A DNA stretch of 63,541 nt, counting the filler, from Schmidtea nova (taxonomy: Eukaryota): NCBI GenBank assembly GCA_044892505.1. It is 4 parts of one record of this genome, joined end to end, with 100 filler letters (N's around TTAATTAATTAA, not from the genome) between each part and the next. Parts side by side here need not be neighbours in the genome. Positions count along the whole stretch, not along the records: positions 1 to 20,213 come from CM097882.1; 3 more parts are not named here. One strand, 5' to 3'. The notes under the pieces are model-generated. The model was not told the origin of the DNA. It worked only from the letters and a program-made list of their open reading frames with translations, and did no database searches. Positions 4,459-20,213 of the stretch are shown piece by piece (the stretch's first letter is position 1; each line of letters begins with the position of its first letter). Made by a program: the position numbers and the translations under genes.

Positions 4459-4569
4459 AGTAGGTAGATGTGTGGAGCCGGGAACAAAGACATTATGACT
4501 CATGCGTGGGCGGAAAAAAAGAACGAAGACCCCCCTCCCCCCCCCGGGGGGTGGTAGAAAAATTTTTTT

Positions 4570-4654
4570 GATGAGTCATCGATGAGTCATCGATGAGTCA
4601 TCGATGAGTCATACTTTTTTTTGATGAGTCATCGATGAGTCATCGATGAGTCAT
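4570..4654. repeat. 11-bp tandem repeat GATGAGTCATC (7 AP-1-type ATGAGTCAT cores)
   Basis: Cores at 4571, 4582, 4593, 4604, 4624, 4635, 4646; further TGA(C/G)TCA at 4496 and near 5010. Confidence 0.9.
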
Positions 4655-4671
4655 AATTTTTTTTTTCAAAT

Positions 4672-4975
4672 TTTTTTTGCGACAAATTTTTTTTTCAAAA
4701 ATTTTTTTCGCGCCAAATTTTTTTTTTCAAAATTTTTTTTCGCGCCAAACTTTTTTTTCAAAAATTTTTTTCGCGCCAAATTTTTTTTTCAAAATTTTTT
4801 TTCGCGCCAAATTTTTTTTTTTCAAAAATTTTTTTTCGCGCCAAATTTTTTTTTCAAATTTTTTTTTTCACGCCAAATTTTTTTTTTTCAAAAATTTTTT
4901 TCGCGCCAAATTTTTTTTTTTTCAAAAATTTTTTTCGCGCCAAATTTTTTTCAAAAATTTTTTTTTAAGACAAAT
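4672..4975. repeat. About 32-bp tandem repeat built on TTTTCGCGCCAAA separated by T/A tracts (E2F-type sites)
   Basis: 7 perfect cores (about 4709, 4741, 4772, 4803, 4837, 4902, 4936) plus 3 degenerate units. Confidence 0.9.
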
Positions 4976-5039
4976 TATTTTTAGTCAAATTTTTTTAAAA
5001 GACAAAATTTGAGTCATCAAAAATATTTACAACAGGTGT

Positions 5040-5412
5040 GCAAACTAAACAAAGACATTTTTATATGTGTGCATGTTTAATTAATTATTATTTGTCAAGT
5101 ATGAAGCTTTTGCACTTCAAAACCATCACAGAAGAGGTTCTGCTTCCAGGGTTCTGATCGCAATGTTCTGCTTCCAGGGTTCTGATACTAAATGTTCTGC
5201 TACTAATGCTTTTTATTTAATTATTATTATTATTATCTTTCAAACTAAACAAAGACTTTGCAACATGCGTGCAAGTTAACAAAGACATTGCAACACACGT
5301 GCAATGACTTTGCAACACGCGTGCAACATGAACAAAGACATTGCAATACACATGCAAACTAAACAAAGACACATGCGTGCAACACATGTGCAACATAAAC
5401 AAAGACATTAAA
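5040..5412. repeat. Dispersed (A)AACAAAGACA / TGCAACAC repeats and duplicated gttctgcttccagggttctgat in the Polinton subterminal region
   Basis: AACAAAGAC near 5048, 5248, 5278, 5331, 5363 and 5398, and also at 4483. Confidence 0.75.
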
Positions 5413-5713
5413 AAGCCAAAATTTATTTATAAATATANNNNNNNNNNNNNNNNNNNNNNNNNNNNNNNNNNNNNNNNNNNNNNNNNNNNNNNNNNNNNNN
5501 NNNNNNNNNNNNNNNNNNNNNNNNNNNNNNNNNNNNNNNNNNNNNNNNNNNNNNNNNNNNNNNNNNNNNNNNNNNNNNNNNNNNNNNNNNNNNNNNNNNN
5601 NNNNNNNNNNNNNNNNNNNNNNNNNNNNNNNNNNNNNNNNNNNNNNNNNNNNNNNNNNNNNNNNNNNNNNNNNNNNTATAATTACTTGTAATAATAATAT
5701 TAATATTAATGAC

Positions 5714-5787
<74 letters not shown>
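5714..5787. repeat. (AAT)n microsatellite
   Basis: Direct reading; similar tracts near 20172 and 60821. Confidence 0.9.
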
Positions 5788-5790
<3 letters not shown>

Positions 5791-6356
5791 TAAATACTCG
5801 TAATAATAACTATAATTACTTGTAATNNNNNNNNNNNNNNNNNNNNNNNNNNNNNNNNNNNNNNNNNNNNNNNNNNNNNNNNNNNNNNNNNNNNNNNNNN
5901 NNNNNNNNNNNNNNNNNNNNNNNNNNNNNNNNNNNNNNNNNNNNNNNNNNNNNNNNNNNNNNNNNNNNNNNNNNNNNNNNNNNNNNNNNNNNNNNNNNNN
6001 NNNNNNNNNNNNNNNNNNNNNNNNNNNNNNNNNNNNNNNNNNNNNNNNNNNNNNNNNNNNNNNNNNNNNNNNNNNNNNNNNNNNNNNNNNNNNNNNNNNN
6101 NNNNNNNNNNNNNNNNNNNNNNNNNNNNNNNNNNNNNNNNNNNNNNNNNNNNNNNNNNNNNNNNNNNNNNNNNNNNNNNNNNNNNNNNNNNNNNNNNNNN
6201 NNNNNNNNNNNNNNNNNNNNNNNNNNNNTAAATGATAAGAACCTTTTTATAAAAAAATAATCAATAACCCACAACAACAACAAAAAAAAAATTAAATTAA
6301 ATTTATAAATCCGTAGTTTTAATTGTTTGCGCAATTTTATATACAACCCAAAATAA

Positions 6357-6372
6357 GGTCCTAAAGAGGACC
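6357..6372 (-). promoter_or_regulatory. Histone-type stem-loop 2 (GGUCCU-CUUU-AGGACC) downstream of pPolB
   Basis: Perfect 6-bp stem with 4-nt pyrimidine loop on the pPolB sense strand; 3' flank not canonical. Confidence 0.6.
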
Positions 6373-6572
6373 ATTAATTCGTTCACATTCCGTATTCTGT
6401 ATCTGATTATTGTCATCATCCTTTGTTTCTTTTTCTTTGAATTTTCAGTTTTCGGTTTTCTCAATATTTTTTTTTTTTTTTTTTTTTCCAATTTTCGTTT
6501 CATTATTTGTTATCTGTTTTCTTTGAGCTAAATTTTTTATATATATTTTTTTTTTATACGATCATAAATTGT

Positions 6573-17932: not shown

Positions 17933-17952
17933 TATTATTACTGTAAATCAAT

Positions 17953-18576
17953 TTAACTTTGTTTATAAACCATGGCTCCTTCCTTGTTAAAAATATCAGT
18001 TCTAACCCTTAAATCATCACTGCATTGTTGAGTAAAATCCAAGAAAATATATCCATGAGGAGATTTTGTAGCATCCTGAAAGGCTTCAATCAAAAAGTTA
18101 CGATTTGAAGGATAAGCTTGTCTTGCCAGAAAATCAATAACTGTTGCATCTCTAGGATTTTTAAAAACAACAAGATATTGAACATTTAAATTACGAGTTC
18201 GATGACTACCGCCCTGATGAAATAAATTCTGAGTTATAAAAATAACAGTAACACCTTTATGTCTACTGATTTTCGTAAATAAATTATTAAAATCCTTTTC
18301 TTTATTTGCTTCTTGATACAAGTCGTCAATGATAATCACATCACCTTGTTTTAATCTAGATGACCAGTTTTTATCGAAACCTTTTATGATTGTCATTTTT
18401 ATTTTACAAAACTGATCTTGTGTCATTCCACTTTCGTCGTCAGCACCCCTATGCCAATAAATATTATTAAATTTTGACTTGAATAATTTCGATTGCAATA
18501 ATTTACAAACAAATAAAGTTTTTCCACTCCCGCTCGGACCAACAATTTGAAACACTGCATCATTTCTTAATTCCAT
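17953..18576 (-). CDS. FtsK/A32-like genome packaging ATPase
   Basis: Walker A GPSGSGKT, Walker B IIIDDL, RHKGVTVIFITQN. Confidence 0.95.
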   Translation of the reverse strand: MELRNDAVFQIVGPSGSGKTLFVCKLLQSKLFKSKFNNIYWHRGADDESGMTQDQFCKIKMTIIKGFDKNWSSRLKQGDVIIIDDLYQEANKEKDFNNLFTKISRHKGVTVIFITQNLFHQGGSHRTRNLNVQYLVVFKNPRDATVIDFLARQAYPSNRNFLIEAFQDATKSPHGYIFLDFTQQCSDDLRVRTDIFNKEGAMVYKQS

Positions 18577-18664
18577 ATTTAAAAATTATATTTTCTTAAT
18601 ATTATTGTTTATATTTGTTTTAAATACCTGTTCTCAAAGTAATCATTTAAAAATATTTTCAGTA

Positions 18665-19132
18665 ATGATTAGAAACATTAATTACAAAGGTAAGACAGAT
18701 GTATCACATATGAAATTTCCAAATGGAAAACCCCAGCAAATTGTTGATCGAAGTGGGAAATACCCAATAATATACTTTAAATCAGGAAGATATAGAATAA
18801 TGGGATGCAGGGAATTTATTAGTGACGAACAAGTTGAGTTTTACGATTTAAAGATACAATCGATAACTGTAACTGCAGATTTAGGATTTATTTGTAATTT
18901 GAATGAATTATCGAAATTAATACCGTGTGTTTACGAGCCAGAATTATTTCCAGCTTTGAGATATATCAAATATAATCCCATGTGTGTAAATATATTTGCA
19001 AGTGGGAAATTAGTCATATTAGGATTAAAAAACAAAGACTATAGTACTATAGTTGATGATATTATTAACGATATAAAATCAATTATAGAAGATAAAGCCT
19101 TTGTTGATTTCATACTAACATGTGACTCATGA
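18665..19132 (+). CDS. TATA-binding-protein (TBP)-like protein, 155 aa
   Basis: KIQSITVTADLG...YEPELFPALRY...VNIFASGKLVILGLK aligns to the TBP C-terminal repeat; degenerate first repeat RNINYKG...YFKSGRYRIMGCR. Confidence 0.85.
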   Translation: MIRNINYKGKTDVSHMKFPNGKPQQIVDRSGKYPIIYFKSGRYRIMGCREFISDEQVEFYDLKIQSITVTADLGFICNLNELSKLIPCVYEPELFPALRYIKYNPMCVNIFASGKLVILGLKNKDYSTIVDDIINDIKSIIEDKAFVDFILTCDS

Positions 19133-19159
19133 CTGCAATATCGATGCATTAGAAATGCA

Positions 19160-19272
19160 CGATTCTGATTGGCTCTGTGTGTATCGTTAGAATAAAGACA
19201 TGTTGTGCATGCTTCATTCTGATTGGTTCATTATGTGTGTTTGATATCATGTGTGTTTCTTTAATATATATA
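19160..19272 (+). promoter_or_regulatory. Putative promoter with two NF-Y boxes and a TATA-like element
   Basis: GATTCTGATTGG at 19161, CATTCTGATTGG at 19215, TAATATATATA at 19262. Confidence 0.5.
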
Positions 19273-19307
19273 CTATGAACAATCTCACATAGTTTATATT
19301 CACAATT

Positions 19308-19952
19308 ATGTCGATGACCCAAACACTAATTAAAAGCCGTAAGGGTTTTAATTTTTAATTTTTCATATTTTATATTATTATTATTTTAGATAAATTAATG
19401 AACGTGATATATCGGAAATTGGAGGAGCTGTTCCCGAACCTGATGCCGGCTCTGGTCTACACGGCTCCTGAGATGTTCCCGTACAAGATTATGGTCTTGA
19501 CGGGAATCGACATCAATCAGATTGTGCTCGATCATATGACGAGCCAGAATACGGATCTCCCAATGGTACCCGAGCACATTATGTGCGCTTATCAATGCGG
19601 GAGCTGCGTGGAAAGAATCCGGCAGTTTAATATCTGGGTTTTGAGGAATTCCCTCAAACTCTATGATGTTCAACAAATGGACAAAATCAATGAGGAGGAG
19701 GAGCAGGATGAACAAGTCAAGGAAACCTGGCCAAACTCTACTCCGGAGCCGATTGATGCCGATGATAATGATGATCAAACAACAGAATTGGAAGCACCAA
19801 CTCTAGATGGTCCATTTCCACCTGAATCTGATGAAACCCATGAATGCATAGAGTCACCACAATCACCAGATTGTGCCGAATGCCATAGACAGCCTGATGG
19901 TGTTGAGGAAGAGGAGGAAGAAGAAGAAGAAGAAAAAGAAGATGAACAATAA
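19308..19952 (+). CDS. Unknown Polinton accessory protein with Cys motifs and acidic tail, join(19308-19338,19390-19952), 197 aa
   Basis: 51-nt GTAAGG..TTTTAG intron in frame; CAYQCGSC, HECIE...DCAECH, poly-Glu tail; visibly more GC-rich than its neighbours. Confidence 0.75.
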
Positions 19953-20170
19953 TTATTAATGTTTAATTAGCTATGTTATTTTTAGTTTAGTTTACTTTAA
20001 TAAAAGTCTTTTTTATTGAATTTAGTTTTCATTTATTTAAATAATATTTTTTTATTAAAACATTTTTATTAGTAGTAATAGTTTTTTTTTTTATTAACCA
20101 TATATAAAAAAGTAAATAGTTTTTTTTTTTTTATAAAATATTAATTAGTATTTTATGTTTTATGTAAGAA

Positions 20171-20211
<41 letters not shown>

Positions 20212-20213
20212 TT

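What the first reader, a model, noticed from the sequence alone, without database searches (positions are those of the whole stretch)
4459..20213. Synthesis: a Polinton that may mimic the host replication-dependent histone programme
Separate observations converge on one element: E2F array, NF-Y promoters, histone-type 3' hairpins on the polymerase mRNA, an E1A-like candidate and a private TBP. Inference: input (E2F/NF-Y), output (SLBP-controlled mRNA) and a possible feed-forward protein couple replication of the element to S phase or the germline. Each part is visible in the sequence; the coupling is a hypothesis.
Basis: inference. Interest (0 to 1): 0.85.

Follow-up and report, generated by a model that had tools for sequence, protein, structure and literature searches.

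The report
Polinton with TBP-like gene, motif arrays
This is an integrated Polinton (adintovirus-like) element with its own TATA-binding-protein-like gene and conserved CCAAT/TATA promoters; its E2F-like repeat array and histone-type hairpin are real but absent from all relatives checked, so the proposed S-phase "histone programme" remains unproven.

Summary
The piece holds a nearly complete Polinton/Maverick-type element. It encodes a protein-primed PolB, an rve integrase with a chromodomain (one in-frame stop), an A32-type ATPase, an adenain-like protease and a capsid-like block. Most of the cited features are in the sequence:
- **E2F-like array:** seven exact and one near-exact copies of a palindromic E2F-type word in one ~32-bp tandem array.
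- **Promoter words:** three Y-box (NF-Y-type) words sit in promoter-like, TATA-containing stretches.
- **Hairpins:** two 6-bp/4-nt hairpins lie after polB. One matches Rfam Histone3 at 29.6 bits, below the gathering score of 34.
- **TBP-like gene:** clear by Pfam and by fold.

Two modules are shared with relatives. The TBP-like gene occurs in four distinct elements and sits near the ATPase gene. A 15-nt Y-box word followed by TATA is identical in two elements.

The rest is not shared. No E2F array or histone-type hairpin was found in any of 10 relatives with at least 400 nt of polB 3' flank. The "E1A-like" ORF has no LxCxE and no named hit.

The E2F array lies beyond the polB 3' end, across two assembly gaps and about 7.5 kb from the nearest promoter-like site, so it may belong to the neighbouring transposon.

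The parts
4459..4569 (.). Unique segment next to the neighbouring transposon. It holds one copy of the 10-nt word ACAAAGACAT, one AP-1-like palindrome, a GC-box/EGR-like word and a C-tract/G-tract. It is the possible end region of the element.
   Evidence: A C-rich tract also occurs in the terminal 287-bp repeats of relative L001.
4570..4654 (.). Tandem array of a palindromic AP-1/GCN4-like 9-mer: 11-nt unit, about 8 copies.
   Evidence: TRF. Seven exact 9-mers in the array against 0.18 expected in the whole piece.
4657..4996 (.). Tandem array, about 32-nt unit, 10.7 copies. The core is a palindromic E2F-type 12-mer flanked by T runs.
   Evidence: The word begins like the canonical E2F site quoted in PMC4686757.
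5000..5437 (.). Further short arrays: a 14/28-nt unit (5136-5201) and a ~30-nt unit (5248-5409). The second carries ACAAAGACAT plus an E-box-like word. The block ends at the first assembly gap.
5438..6228 (.). Two assembly gaps (5438-5676 and 5827-6228) around a 150-nt TAA-repeat island. Continuity is unknown and the gaps were not filled.
6548..6593 (-). Histone-type hairpin 1. The stem-loop is 6573-6588, with a 6-bp stem and a 4-nt loop.
   Evidence: Rfam RF00032, 29.6 bits against a gathering score of 34, E 6.4e-5. It forms in both the MFE and centroid folds of the 461-nt flank.
6357..6372 (-). Hairpin 2. Same shape as hairpin 1, with one compensatory stem change. A weak histone match.
   Evidence: (12.5 bits, E 4.5).
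6757..10932 (-). [quoted passage not shown] It has an N/Q-rich insert near the N terminus and an Endonuclease_7-like zinc module.
   Evidence: PF03175, E 6.6e-27, when the C-terminal half is searched apart. Endonuclease_7 hit. 52% identity over 1118 aligned positions (query residues 238-1341), nearly the full length of the 1219-aa PolB of L017.
11030..12110 (.). Spacer with 12.6% G+C, full of tandem repeats, between polB and the upstream promoter-like site.
12110..12449 (-). Short coding-like pieces after an ATG at 12449-12447, separated by AT-rich intervals. Possibly a small spliced accessory gene.
   Evidence: No homologue in the fetched loci.
12534..12577 (-). Promoter-like site P1: a 15-nt Y-box word with a TATA run 21 nt downstream. 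ACAAAGACAT and a palindromic CRE-like word lie just upstream (12639-12676).
   Evidence: The 15-nt word is identical in L001-L003 and L004.
12805..13206 (-). Conserved ORF of unknown function (133 aa).
   Evidence: tblastn against L001, L004, L005: 30-43% identity. No Pfam hit.
13239..13598 (-). Adenain-like cysteine protease.
   Evidence: Peptidase_C5, 26.6 bits against a cut-off of 21.3. 50-56% identity in relatives.
13688..14908 (-). Candidate major capsid protein (406 aa).
   Evidence: Weak DJR-like Pfam hit, 16.5 bits against a cut-off of 27. 54-63% identical proteins of 408-410 aa at the same place in relatives. No PDB hit.
14905..16315 (-). Two conserved virion-block ORFs (121 and 350 aa). 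The second is present as three tandem paralogues in L005.
16285..17331 (-). Integrase (rve core plus chromodomain). Broken once by an in-frame stop. No frameshift.
   Evidence: Pfam rve and Chromo. One stop in a single 349-codon frame, against an intact 343-aa gene in L001.
17387..17932 (-). Conserved basic ORF (181 aa) of unknown function.
17953..18576 (-). FtsK/A32-type packaging ATPase.
   Evidence: Pox_A32, 29.8 bits against a cut-off of 22.8. 72-77% identity in relatives.
18665..19132 (+). TBP-like gene (155 aa), divergent from the ATPase gene across 88 nt.
   Evidence: Pfam TBP, E 1.3e-13. The family's N terminus fixes the start codon. AF2 pLDDT 87.5. The top 44 PDB fold matches are all TBP.
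19158..19272 (+). Promoter-like site P2: two Y-box words (19165 and 19219) and a TATA run (about 19265).
   Evidence: L001 has the same layout right after its TBP-like gene.
19398..19952 (+). An AATAAA word follows at 19999-20004.

Best explanation
**What it is.** An integrated Polinton/Maverick element of the adintovirus-like kind. Coding capacity is almost intact; the integrase carries one in-frame stop.

**Shown.**
- The lineage carries its own compact TBP-like factor. Its second repeat and the stirrup motif are conserved. Its first repeat has lost both helices and one of the four DNA-wedging phenylalanines.
- The lineage uses Pol II-type promoters made of a Y-box (CCAAT, NF-Y-type) word with a TATA run 15-43 nt downstream. 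These stand in front of non-structural genes: the TBP-like gene itself in L004, the next small gene in L001, and the acidic ORF and a small gene upstream of polB here.

**Inferred.**
- These promoters mark an early gene class read by host Pol II. The host CCAAT factor would help, with the element's TBP-like protein in place of, or beside, host TBP.
- The ~1-kb block at the polB-side end is a stack of short tandem arrays whose cores equal consensus words for host factors (AP-1-like, E2F-like, Sox/TCF-like plus E-box-like). I read it as a copy-specific terminal enhancer or docking block. It could tie transcription, or initiation at the end of the element, to the growth state of the cell.
- The two hairpins after polB are most likely a 3'-end or termination structure of histone shape. 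Whether the host stem-loop binding protein uses them is open.

**Not shown.** A joined S-phase programme is not demonstrated and is not a trait of the lineage.
For: - **Polinton gene set:**
- **TBP-like family:** 61 database relatives, mostly 145-160 aa. The gene sits near the A32-type ATPase gene in four distinct elements besides the window: L001, L004, L005/L006 and L010.
- **TBP-like structure:** Pfam, predicted model and fold search. Invariant F58, F115, F131 and E111-P112-E113.
- **Promoter:** the Y-box word is enriched. The 15-nt word is identical in the window, L001-L003 and L004, each with TATA downstream.
- **Arrays:**
- **Relatives' arrays:** their end regions also carry short-motif arrays, with different words.
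- **Hairpins:** the only two of their kind in the piece, both after polB, differing by a compensatory change. Both have G-C at stem pair 2 and U at loop position 3, the marks named in the preprint read. Both are present in the folds.
Against: - **Factor identities rest on word matches.** No motif library or binding data was available.
- **Tandem arrays inflate counts.** One unit was amplified.
- **Array ownership is uncertain.** Two assembly gaps separate the arrays from polB, with no sequence link except a 10-nt word. They also lie just upstream of the first ORF of the neighbouring transposon-like gene, at 4420.
- **Not conserved.** Arrays and hairpins are absent from all relatives examined. 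The Y-box promoter is missing in L005, L010, L011 and L012.
- **Hairpin 1 falls short.** It is below Rfam's gathering score, about 160 nt from the stop codon, and preceded by two ATTAAA words.
- **The host is unidentified.** Its own histone hairpins and U7 RNA could not be compared.
Confidence: 0.6

Rival explanations
1. The element mimics the replication-dependent histone programme. E2F and NF-Y sites switch it on in S phase. The polB mRNA ends in a histone stem-loop and is controlled by the stem-loop binding protein. An E1A-like protein feeds forward on Rb/E2F.
For: - The E2F-type array, the Y-box promoters and the histone-shaped hairpins on the polB sense strand are all present.
- Hairpin 1 has E 6.4e-5 against all of Rfam.
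- The library search found no prior report of this idea.
Against: - There is no LxCxE, and no E1A or other named hit for the acidic ORF.
- The E2F array is at the far end of the element, beyond the polB 3' end, not at a promoter.
- The hairpin is about 160 nt from the stop, against a reported 25-60 nt. It is below the Rfam threshold.
- No clear downstream purine-rich element lies at the usual distance.
- The modules are absent in all 10 relatives with enough polB 3' flank.
Confidence: 0.1
2. The arrays at 4459-5437 are not part of the Polinton. They belong to the 5' region of the neighbouring transposon-like gene (ORFs at 2106-4420, minus strand) or to host repeat DNA. They were brought next to polB by insertion history or by scaffolding across the gaps.
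For: - The arrays sit 150-580 nt upstream of that gene's first ATG at 4420.
- Two gaps of estimated length lie between the arrays and polB.
- blastn finds no non-trivial similarity between the block and the rest of the element.
Against: - The 10-nt word ACAAAGACAT occurs exactly five times in the block and once beside promoter P1, with a one-mismatch copy inside promoter P2.
- A C-rich tract like that at 4531-4545 occurs in the terminal repeats of relative L001.
- Relatives also have motif arrays near their ends.
- No inverted-repeat link exists between the block and the far side of the transposon.
Confidence: 0.25
3. The arrays and hairpins are neutral or structural repeat DNA, as is common at Polinton ends. 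Their likeness to transcription-factor words and to the histone hairpin is chance, found by looking for it.
For: - All E2F-like and AP-1-like copies come from amplification of one unit each.
- The words differ completely between relatives.
- Hairpin 2 is not significant alone.
- The folds are no more stable than shuffles (z -1.9, -1.7 and -0.8).
Against: - Several different arrays in one kilobase each have a perfect palindromic consensus-like core.
- Hairpin 1 is significant against the whole of Rfam.
- The two hairpins keep pairing through a change on both sides.
Confidence: 0.3
4. The terminal arrays serve replication rather than transcription. They would act as auxiliary origin elements that bring host factors to the end of a protein-primed linear genome. 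Adenovirus terminal repeats are known to use host factors in this way (my own knowledge; no such genome was fetched).
For: - The block is at the polB-side end of the element.
- The polymerase is of the protein-primed type.
- The nearest promoter-like site is about 7.5 kb away.
Against: - The true terminus and the inverted terminal repeat are not defined in this piece.
- The other end is not in the piece.
- There is nothing to distinguish this from an enhancer role.
Confidence: 0.15

Closest known systems
Polintons/Mavericks of the adintovirus kind (Starrett et al. 2021, PMC8502044)
   Same: - Protein-primed PolB matching PF03175.
- rve integrase, FtsK/A32-type ATPase, adenain-like protease and a capsid block.
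- Relatives carry Bcl-2 and RING accessory genes. The paper notes Bcl2 and IAP homologues in this group.
   Different: - The TBP-like gene is a lineage-wide accessory gene here.
- The polB segment is inverted relative to relatives L001, L004 and L017.
- There is no LXCXE 'Oncoid'.
- An OTU domain in PolB was not detected by Pfam and was not otherwise tested.
- Terminal repeats could not be defined.
Cellular TBP and TBP-related factors; the 'TBP' gene label on MELD-virus maps in PMC8502044 (Fig. 5 legend)
   Same: - Pfam TBP and a saddle-type fold.
- The second repeat, the stirrup motif and three of the four wedge phenylalanines are invariant in the family.
   Different: - About 150 aa against about 180 aa for the cellular core.
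- The first repeat lacks both helices and one phenylalanine.
- No N-terminal tail.
- Encoded by a mobile element near its packaging ATPase gene.
- The earlier paper only labels such a gene. I found no analysis of it.
Replication-dependent histone mRNA 3' stem-loop (Rfam RF00032)
   Same: - 6-bp stem, 4-nt loop, GG at the base, G-C at pair 2 and U at loop position 3.
- AC follows the stem in hairpin 1.
   Different: - Follows a polymerase gene, not a histone gene.
- About 160 and 380 nt from the stop.
- The first loop base is C.
- Below the gathering score.
- No evident downstream element.
- Not shared by relatives.
Host-factor site clusters in early promoters and terminal repeats of small and mid-size DNA viruses of animals (my own knowledge; none fetched or compared)
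   Same: Repeated consensus-like words for growth-linked host factors placed near a genome end or ahead of replication genes.
   Different: - Here the words are long, regular tandem arrays with T-run spacers.
- Their ownership, orientation and target gene are unknown.
- The likeness is recalled, not tested.

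Membership tests
Polinton/Maverick (adintovirus-like) | [quoted passage not shown] | tested here: met
   PF03175, 94.9 bits, E 6.6e-27, for the C-terminal half. 52-61% identity to PolB of relatives whose called genes carry PF03175.
Polinton/Maverick (adintovirus-like) | Retrovirus-type (rve) integrase | tested here: met
   rve at 34.4 bits and Chromo at 25.5 bits. The gene carries one in-frame stop.
Polinton/Maverick (adintovirus-like) | Packaging ATPase and adenain-like protease | tested here: met
   Pox_A32, 29.8 bits against 22.8. Peptidase_C5, 26.6 bits against 21.3.
Polinton/Maverick (adintovirus-like) | Double jelly-roll major capsid protein | tested here: inconclusive
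   DJR-like domain, 16.5 bits, below the cut-off of 27. No PDB or PHROGs hit. Size, position and 54-63% identity to relatives fit.
Polinton/Maverick (adintovirus-like) | Terminal inverted repeats and target-site duplication | not testable with these tools
   Only one end can lie in the piece. No inverted repeat other than simple repeats was found.
TBP family (PF00352) | Pfam score above the curated cut-off | tested here: met
   51 bits against 22.9, for the second repeat.
TBP family (PF00352) | Two-repeat saddle fold | tested here: met
   AF2 pLDDT 87.5, pTM 0.78. The top 44 Foldseek PDB hits are all TBP, probability 1.0, TM 0.54-0.65. The first repeat has strands only.
TBP family (PF00352) | Four DNA-wedging phenylalanines (role from established knowledge) | tested here: not met
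   Three are invariant (F58, F115, F131). The first-repeat stirrup position is Q, S, K, R, Y or another residue in the family.
Histone 3' stem-loop (RF00032) | 6-bp stem, 4-nt loop, G-C at pair 2, U at loop position 3 | tested here: met
   Both hairpins. The criteria are as stated in the preprint read.
Histone 3' stem-loop (RF00032) | Rfam gathering score | tested here: not met
   29.6 and 12.5 bits against 34.
Histone 3' stem-loop (RF00032) | Short distance from the stop codon (25-60 nt; metazoan median 30) | tested here: not met
   About 160 nt and 380 nt.
Histone 3' stem-loop (RF00032) | Downstream purine-rich element pairing with U7 RNA; non-polyadenylated end | not testable with these tools
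   The host and its U7 RNA are unknown. The flank is A-rich throughout. No RNA data.
E2F-controlled promoter | E2F consensus word | tested here: met
   Seven exact palindromic double sites. The canonical word is quoted in PMC4686757. No motif library was available.
E2F-controlled promoter | Site close to the start of the controlled gene | tested here: not met
   For polB, the array is beyond its 3' end and about 7.5 kb from promoter-like site P1. The nearest ATG belongs to the neighbouring transposon-like ORF.
NF-Y (Y-box/CCAAT) plus TATA promoter | Y-box word with TATA downstream, ahead of an ATG | tested here: met
   Window P1 and P2, L001 and L004. The Y-box word is quoted in PMC7226217. 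Binding by NF-Y was not tested.
NF-Y (Y-box/CCAAT) plus TATA promoter | Conservation among relatives | tested here: met
   An identical 15-nt word in the window, L001-L003 and L004. Absent in L005, L010, L011 and L012.
E1A-like / 'Oncoid' proteins | LXCXE motif | tested here: not met
   No strict match in any ORF of 40 codons or more, nor upstream of polB. The acidic ORF has a near-miss with H in place of L.
E1A-like / 'Oncoid' proteins | Named hit by sequence or fold | tested here: not met
   No Pfam hit at E up to 10. No PDB hit below E 1. One weak hit among 1.84 billion representatives. The model has pLDDT 44, so no fold search was run.

The most novel reading that the evidence does not exclude
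This copy of a Polinton has taken over both ends of the host's S-phase histone circuit. An E2F-site array would act as the input. A histone-type stem-loop would act as the 3' end of its polymerase mRNA, so that polymerase supply is limited to S phase. A lineage-wide TBP-like factor and Y-box/TATA promoters would form the basal machinery. It would be the first mobile-element or viral gene shown to use the stem-loop binding protein pathway.
Probability: 0.1. Interest if true: 0.85.

Novelty: new variant of a known kind. Interest (0 to 1): 0.5.

Why it matters
How Polintons and adintovirus-like elements are transcribed, and how they time their replication in the host, is almost unknown. This element gives two concrete handles on that question:
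- **A compact TBP-like factor.** It is conserved in a whole lineage of these elements.
- **A shared Y-box/TATA promoter word.** It marks their non-structural genes.

Together these point to a defined early promoter class and a virus-encoded basal factor. Both can be studied by sequence, structure and expression data alone.

The E2F-like array and the histone-shaped hairpin would be remarkable if functional. At present they are single-copy observations.

Tried and rejected
**Searches that found nothing**
1. Exact look-up of the window's capsid and ATPase proteins: not on record. The source genome and host stay unidentified.
2. The flank ORF search gave only unnamed metagenome proteins. The sample accessions occur in no paper.
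3. The IMG/VR scan with PolB found no relative. A hairpin word had no match.
4. An array word gave three single matches in 15-40 kb contigs, taken as chance and not followed.
5. No terminal inverted repeats were found beyond simple repeats.
6. The second hairpin was rejected as a histone element on its own (12.5 bits).
7. The capsid profile had no PDB hit.
8. A contig of the neighbouring transposon family (L035) lacks the 5' region, so it could not settle who owns the arrays.

9. The small coding-like pieces upstream of polB might be polB leader exons. I rejected this as unnecessary, because PolB aligns over nearly its full length with a 1219-aa relative from its own ATG.
10. No fold search was run for the acidic ORF, because its model is poor.

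**Slips and borderline steps I declare; nothing was deleted**
- In scripts and in my reasoning I used short consensus words for host transcription-factor sites. In my reasoning I also used the histone stem-loop consensus and fragments of cellular TBP. None is from a virus. They are leads, later backed only in part by papers.
- **Integrase ORF bounds.** My first notebook entry gives the bounds of the two integrase ORF pieces. I wrote it before I saw that they are one broken gene.
- **Fetched relatives.** I fetched uncultivated metagenomic relatives by looking up homologues of the window's own proteins, by the search for related loci and by pattern. Their Bcl-2 genes suggest animal hosts. I used them only for gene order, identity figures, motif presence and counts.

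Full report
**Layout and gaps**

The usable piece is 1-20213. N runs are at 5438-5676 and 5827-6228. The only ORFs that cross them are X-filled artefacts. The 150-nt island between them is a TAA repeat, so no reading frame depends on the gaps.

The gaps matter in another way. They separate the motif arrays (4459-5437) from the polB 3' flank (6229-6756). blastn finds no non-trivial similarity between that left block and the rest of the element. The one link is a 10-nt word, ACAAAGACAT. It is exact five times in the block and once at 12667, beside an internal promoter-like site. One-mismatch copies lie at 12713 and 19192.

**The element**

All core genes are on the minus strand:
- **PolB** (6757-10932 from its first ATG). 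It matches PF03175 at E 6.6e-27 when the C-terminal half is searched apart. The whole protein gave only an Endonuclease_7-like hit.
- **Conserved ORF** of 133 aa.
- **Adenain-like protease.**
- **Candidate major capsid protein** of 406 aa. It has only a weak DJR-like Pfam hit and no PDB hit.
- **Two more conserved virion-block ORFs.**
- **rve integrase with a chromodomain.**
- **Basic ORF** of unknown function.
- **A32/FtsK-type ATPase**.

The integrase is broken once by an in-frame stop, with no frameshift. Its 349-codon span compares with an intact 343-aa gene in relative L001. The other core genes are open.

On the plus strand, 88 nt from the ATPase start, lie a TBP-like gene (18665-19132) and then an acidic ORF (19398-19952). 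To the left of 4459 are five ORF pieces of a transposon-like gene on the minus strand (2106-4420). They have no Pfam hit and only unnamed metagenome relatives. The right end of the element is not in the piece, and no terminal inverted repeat could be found.

**Relatives**

The TBP-like protein has 61 database relatives. About 40 of them are compact proteins of 145-160 aa from metagenomes and read-archive assemblies. Look-ups of six of them gave contigs with the same Polinton gene set. Identities to the window are 72-77% for the ATPase, 54-63% for the capsid protein and 58% for PolB.

A PolB-based scan of JGI metagenomes gave 19 more loci at 39-59% identity. In L005 and L010 the TBP-like gene stands beside a Bcl-2 homologue, and in L005 near a RING gene. 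This fits the adintovirus description, which notes Bcl2 and IAP homologues (PMC8502044), and suggests animal hosts.

In L001, L004 and L017 polB is convergent with the virion block. In the window it is co-directional and faces the left end. The polB segment is therefore inverted here, and its 3' flank is not homologous to theirs.

The host of the window was not identified.

**TBP-like gene: confirmed and lineage-wide**

- Pfam TBP scores 51 bits against a cut-off of 22.9.
- The family's shared N terminus fixes the start at 18665.
- The AlphaFold model has pLDDT 87.5, and its top 44 PDB matches are all TBP.
- The protein is shortened. The first repeat keeps its strands but has no helices. The second repeat is complete.
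- Invariant in the family are F58, F115, F131 and the E-P-E-L-F-P stirrup of the second repeat.
- By established knowledge of TBP, these are three of the four DNA-wedging phenylalanines and the TFIIB-contacting stirrup. The fourth phenylalanine position varies.

My inference is that the protein can sit on TATA-like DNA and recruit TFIIB, while lacking surfaces that host regulators use.

A 'TBP' label already appears on maps of related viruses in PMC8502044 (Fig. 5 legend). The gene is therefore not new as such, but I found no analysis of it.

**Y-box/TATA promoters: the best-supported cis module**

The 8-nt Y-box word occurs four times against 0.47 expected. Three copies are non-coding:
- **P1** (12562-12569, minus strand). 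It has a TATA run 21 nt downstream and an ATG 91 nt further on.
- **P2** (19165 and 19219, plus strand). It has a TATA run near 19265, and the acidic ORF's ATG is at 19398.

The extended 15-nt word at P1 is identical in L001-L003 and in L004. In each of those loci TATA follows 15 nt downstream, and an ATG follows after 45-60 nt. In L004 that ATG is the TBP-like gene itself. In L001 it is the small gene right after the TBP-like gene.

The word is the classical Y-box (PMC7226217). Binding by NF-Y is inferred, not shown. The module is absent from L005, L010, L011 and L012.

P1 is 1.6 kb upstream of the polB ATG. Between them lie small coding-like pieces and a 12.6% G+C spacer. PolB aligns over nearly its full length with the 1219-aa PolB of L017 from its own ATG. 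P1 may therefore drive a small separate gene rather than polB.

**The left block**

- 4570-4654 is an 11-nt array of a palindromic AP-1-like 9-mer, with 7 exact copies.
- 4657-4996 is a ~32-nt array. Its core is a palindromic E2F-type 12-mer, with 7 exact copies and 1 near-exact copy. It begins like the canonical E2F site quoted in PMC4686757.
- 5136-5409 holds two more arrays. One carries ACAAAGACAT with an E-box-like word.
- 4459-4569 holds single AP-1-like, GC-box/EGR-like and C/G-tract words.

Every E2F-type word in the piece lies in this one array, so there is none near P1, P2 or any gene start of the element.

Relatives have arrays in their end regions too, but with other words. L001 has a direct repeat of a nuclear-receptor-like half-site, an E-box-like palindrome, and 287-bp repeats with C tracts and the Y-box. 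L004 has twelve copies of a Sox/TCF-like word.

The factor names are recollections matched by eye. No motif library was at hand.

The block also lies 150-580 nt upstream of the neighbouring transposon's first ATG. I could not exclude that it belongs to that transposon.

**Hairpins**

In 20 kb there are only two perfect 6-bp/4-nt hairpins with at least 3 G+C. Both lie after polB, both are of one form, and they differ by a change on both sides of one pair. None of 300 shuffles gave two hairpins starting with GG.

On the polB sense strand the loops are U-rich. Both hairpins have G-C at stem pair 2 and U at loop position 3, the marks named in the preprint 10.64898/2026.10.14.759114.

Hairpin 1 scores 29.6 bits on Rfam Histone3 (E 6.4e-5 for the whole piece against all families). 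This is below the gathering score of 34. Hairpin 2 scores 12.5 bits. Both form in the folded 461-nt flank, but the folds are not unusually stable.

Several points count against a histone-type role:
- The hairpins start about 160 and 380 nt after the stop codon. The reported distance is 25-60 nt.
- Two ATTAAA words precede hairpin 1, and there is no AATAAA.
- No clear downstream element lies at the usual distance.
- No credible small ORF ends just before them.

**Acidic ORF**

- It has no relative in the first protein search.
- It has one weak hit among 1.84 billion representatives, on a 601-nt contig.
- It has no Pfam hit at E up to 10 and no PDB hit below E 1.
- Its model is poor (pLDDT 44), so no fold search was run.
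- There is no LxCxE in any ORF of 40 codons or more, nor upstream of polB. The ORF has only a near-miss.
- Its first ~45 residues are shared with small ORFs that follow the TBP-like gene in L005/L006, L011 and L012, with nine invariant positions.

It is therefore a member of a small accessory family with a private acidic tail. Its G+C is 0.456, against about 0.30 for its neighbours. I had adenovirus E1A in mind as the comparator, and none of the searches returned it.

**Co-occurrence test**

Ten relatives have at least 400 nt of polB 3' flank: L001, L004, L016-L020, L022, L026 and L028. None has a Histone3 match at E up to 10, and none has a GG-start 6/4 hairpin. No fetched relative has an E2F-type array.

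The TBP-like gene recurs in every long relative found through it. The Y-box/TATA word recurs in two distinct elements. The caveats are that no close relatives were available and that polB is inverted here.

**Reading**

- **Shown:** a Polinton of the adintovirus kind, a lineage-wide TBP-like gene, and a shared Y-box/TATA promoter word.
- **Inferred:** an early promoter class served by the host CCAAT factor together with the element's own TBP-like protein.
- **Inferred:** a copy-specific terminal block of host-factor words acting as an enhancer or origin helper.
- **Open:** whether the hairpins are used by the histone 3'-end pathway.

I put the joined S-phase programme at about 0.1.

- No gap was filled.
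- Broken genes are given by count only. The window's integrase has one stop. The PolB-homologous stretch of L001 has one stop.

Noticed in passing
window 2106-4420 (minus strand): Five consecutive ORF pieces of a transposon-like gene. They have no Pfam hit and only unnamed metagenome relatives (37-49% identity). Whether the pieces are exons or breaks was not resolved. Its first ATG (4420) faces the motif arrays.
   Followed up: partly
window 24-239 (plus strand, frame 3): An open stretch of about 72 codons runs in near the left edge and ends in a stop. It may be the last exon of a host gene.
   Followed up: no
L005 8091-8576 and 10662-11075; L010 2678-3163: Relatives carry a Bcl-2 homologue directly upstream of the TBP-like gene, and L005 also carries a RING-finger gene. 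The window has neither.
   Followed up: partly
L005 2707-5741: Three tandem paralogues of the 350-aa virion-block ORF that is single in the window (15263-16315), at 31-36% identity.
   Followed up: no
L001 16-135, 209-1294, 3730-3848; L004 2437-2643: End regions of relatives carry their own short-motif tandem arrays. They include a nuclear-receptor-like half-site repeat, an E-box-like palindrome, C tracts with the Y-box word, and a 12-copy Sox/TCF-like word. Arrays of factor-like words may be a general habit of the lineage, with the words differing between elements.
   Followed up: partly
window 6757-12800 compared with L001, L004, L017: The polB segment is inverted relative to three relatives, where polB is convergent with the virion block. 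The TBP-like gene is divergent from the ATPase gene here and in L005/L010, but co-directional in L001/L004.
   Followed up: partly
window 10230-10760 (PolB residues about 60-235): An Asn/Gln-rich low-complexity insert in the PolB N-terminal region has no counterpart in the 1219-aa PolB of L017. A poly-Gln run lies near the C terminus (6817-6870).
   Followed up: partly
window about 8830-8980 (PolB residues 683-731): An Endonuclease_7-like zinc module lies inside PolB (24.4 bits against a cut-off of 23.6). The stretch is well conserved in L017.
   Followed up: partly
window 13239-13598; L001 11842-12177; L005 807-1157: The protease reading frame has no ATG ahead of its conserved part, and no gene is called there in the relatives. 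It may be expressed by splicing or from a non-ATG start.
   Followed up: no
window 12639-12646: A perfect palindromic CRE-like 8-mer, the only one in the piece. It lies about 70 nt upstream of the Y-box of P1, next to ACAAAGACAT.
   Followed up: no
window 6624-6669 (minus-strand sense): A 13-nt tandem repeat (3.5 copies) in the polB 3' flank carries the two ATTAAA words that precede hairpin 1.
   Followed up: no
window 6648-6890 (minus strand): An 80-codon alternative-frame, low-complexity ORF overlaps the polB end and stops 55 nt before hairpin 1. That is the canonical histone distance. There is no other support that it is a gene.
   Followed up: no
L013-L015: Single exact matches of a 19-nt array word in three IMG/VR contigs of 15-40 kb. 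Taken as chance and not examined.
   Followed up: no
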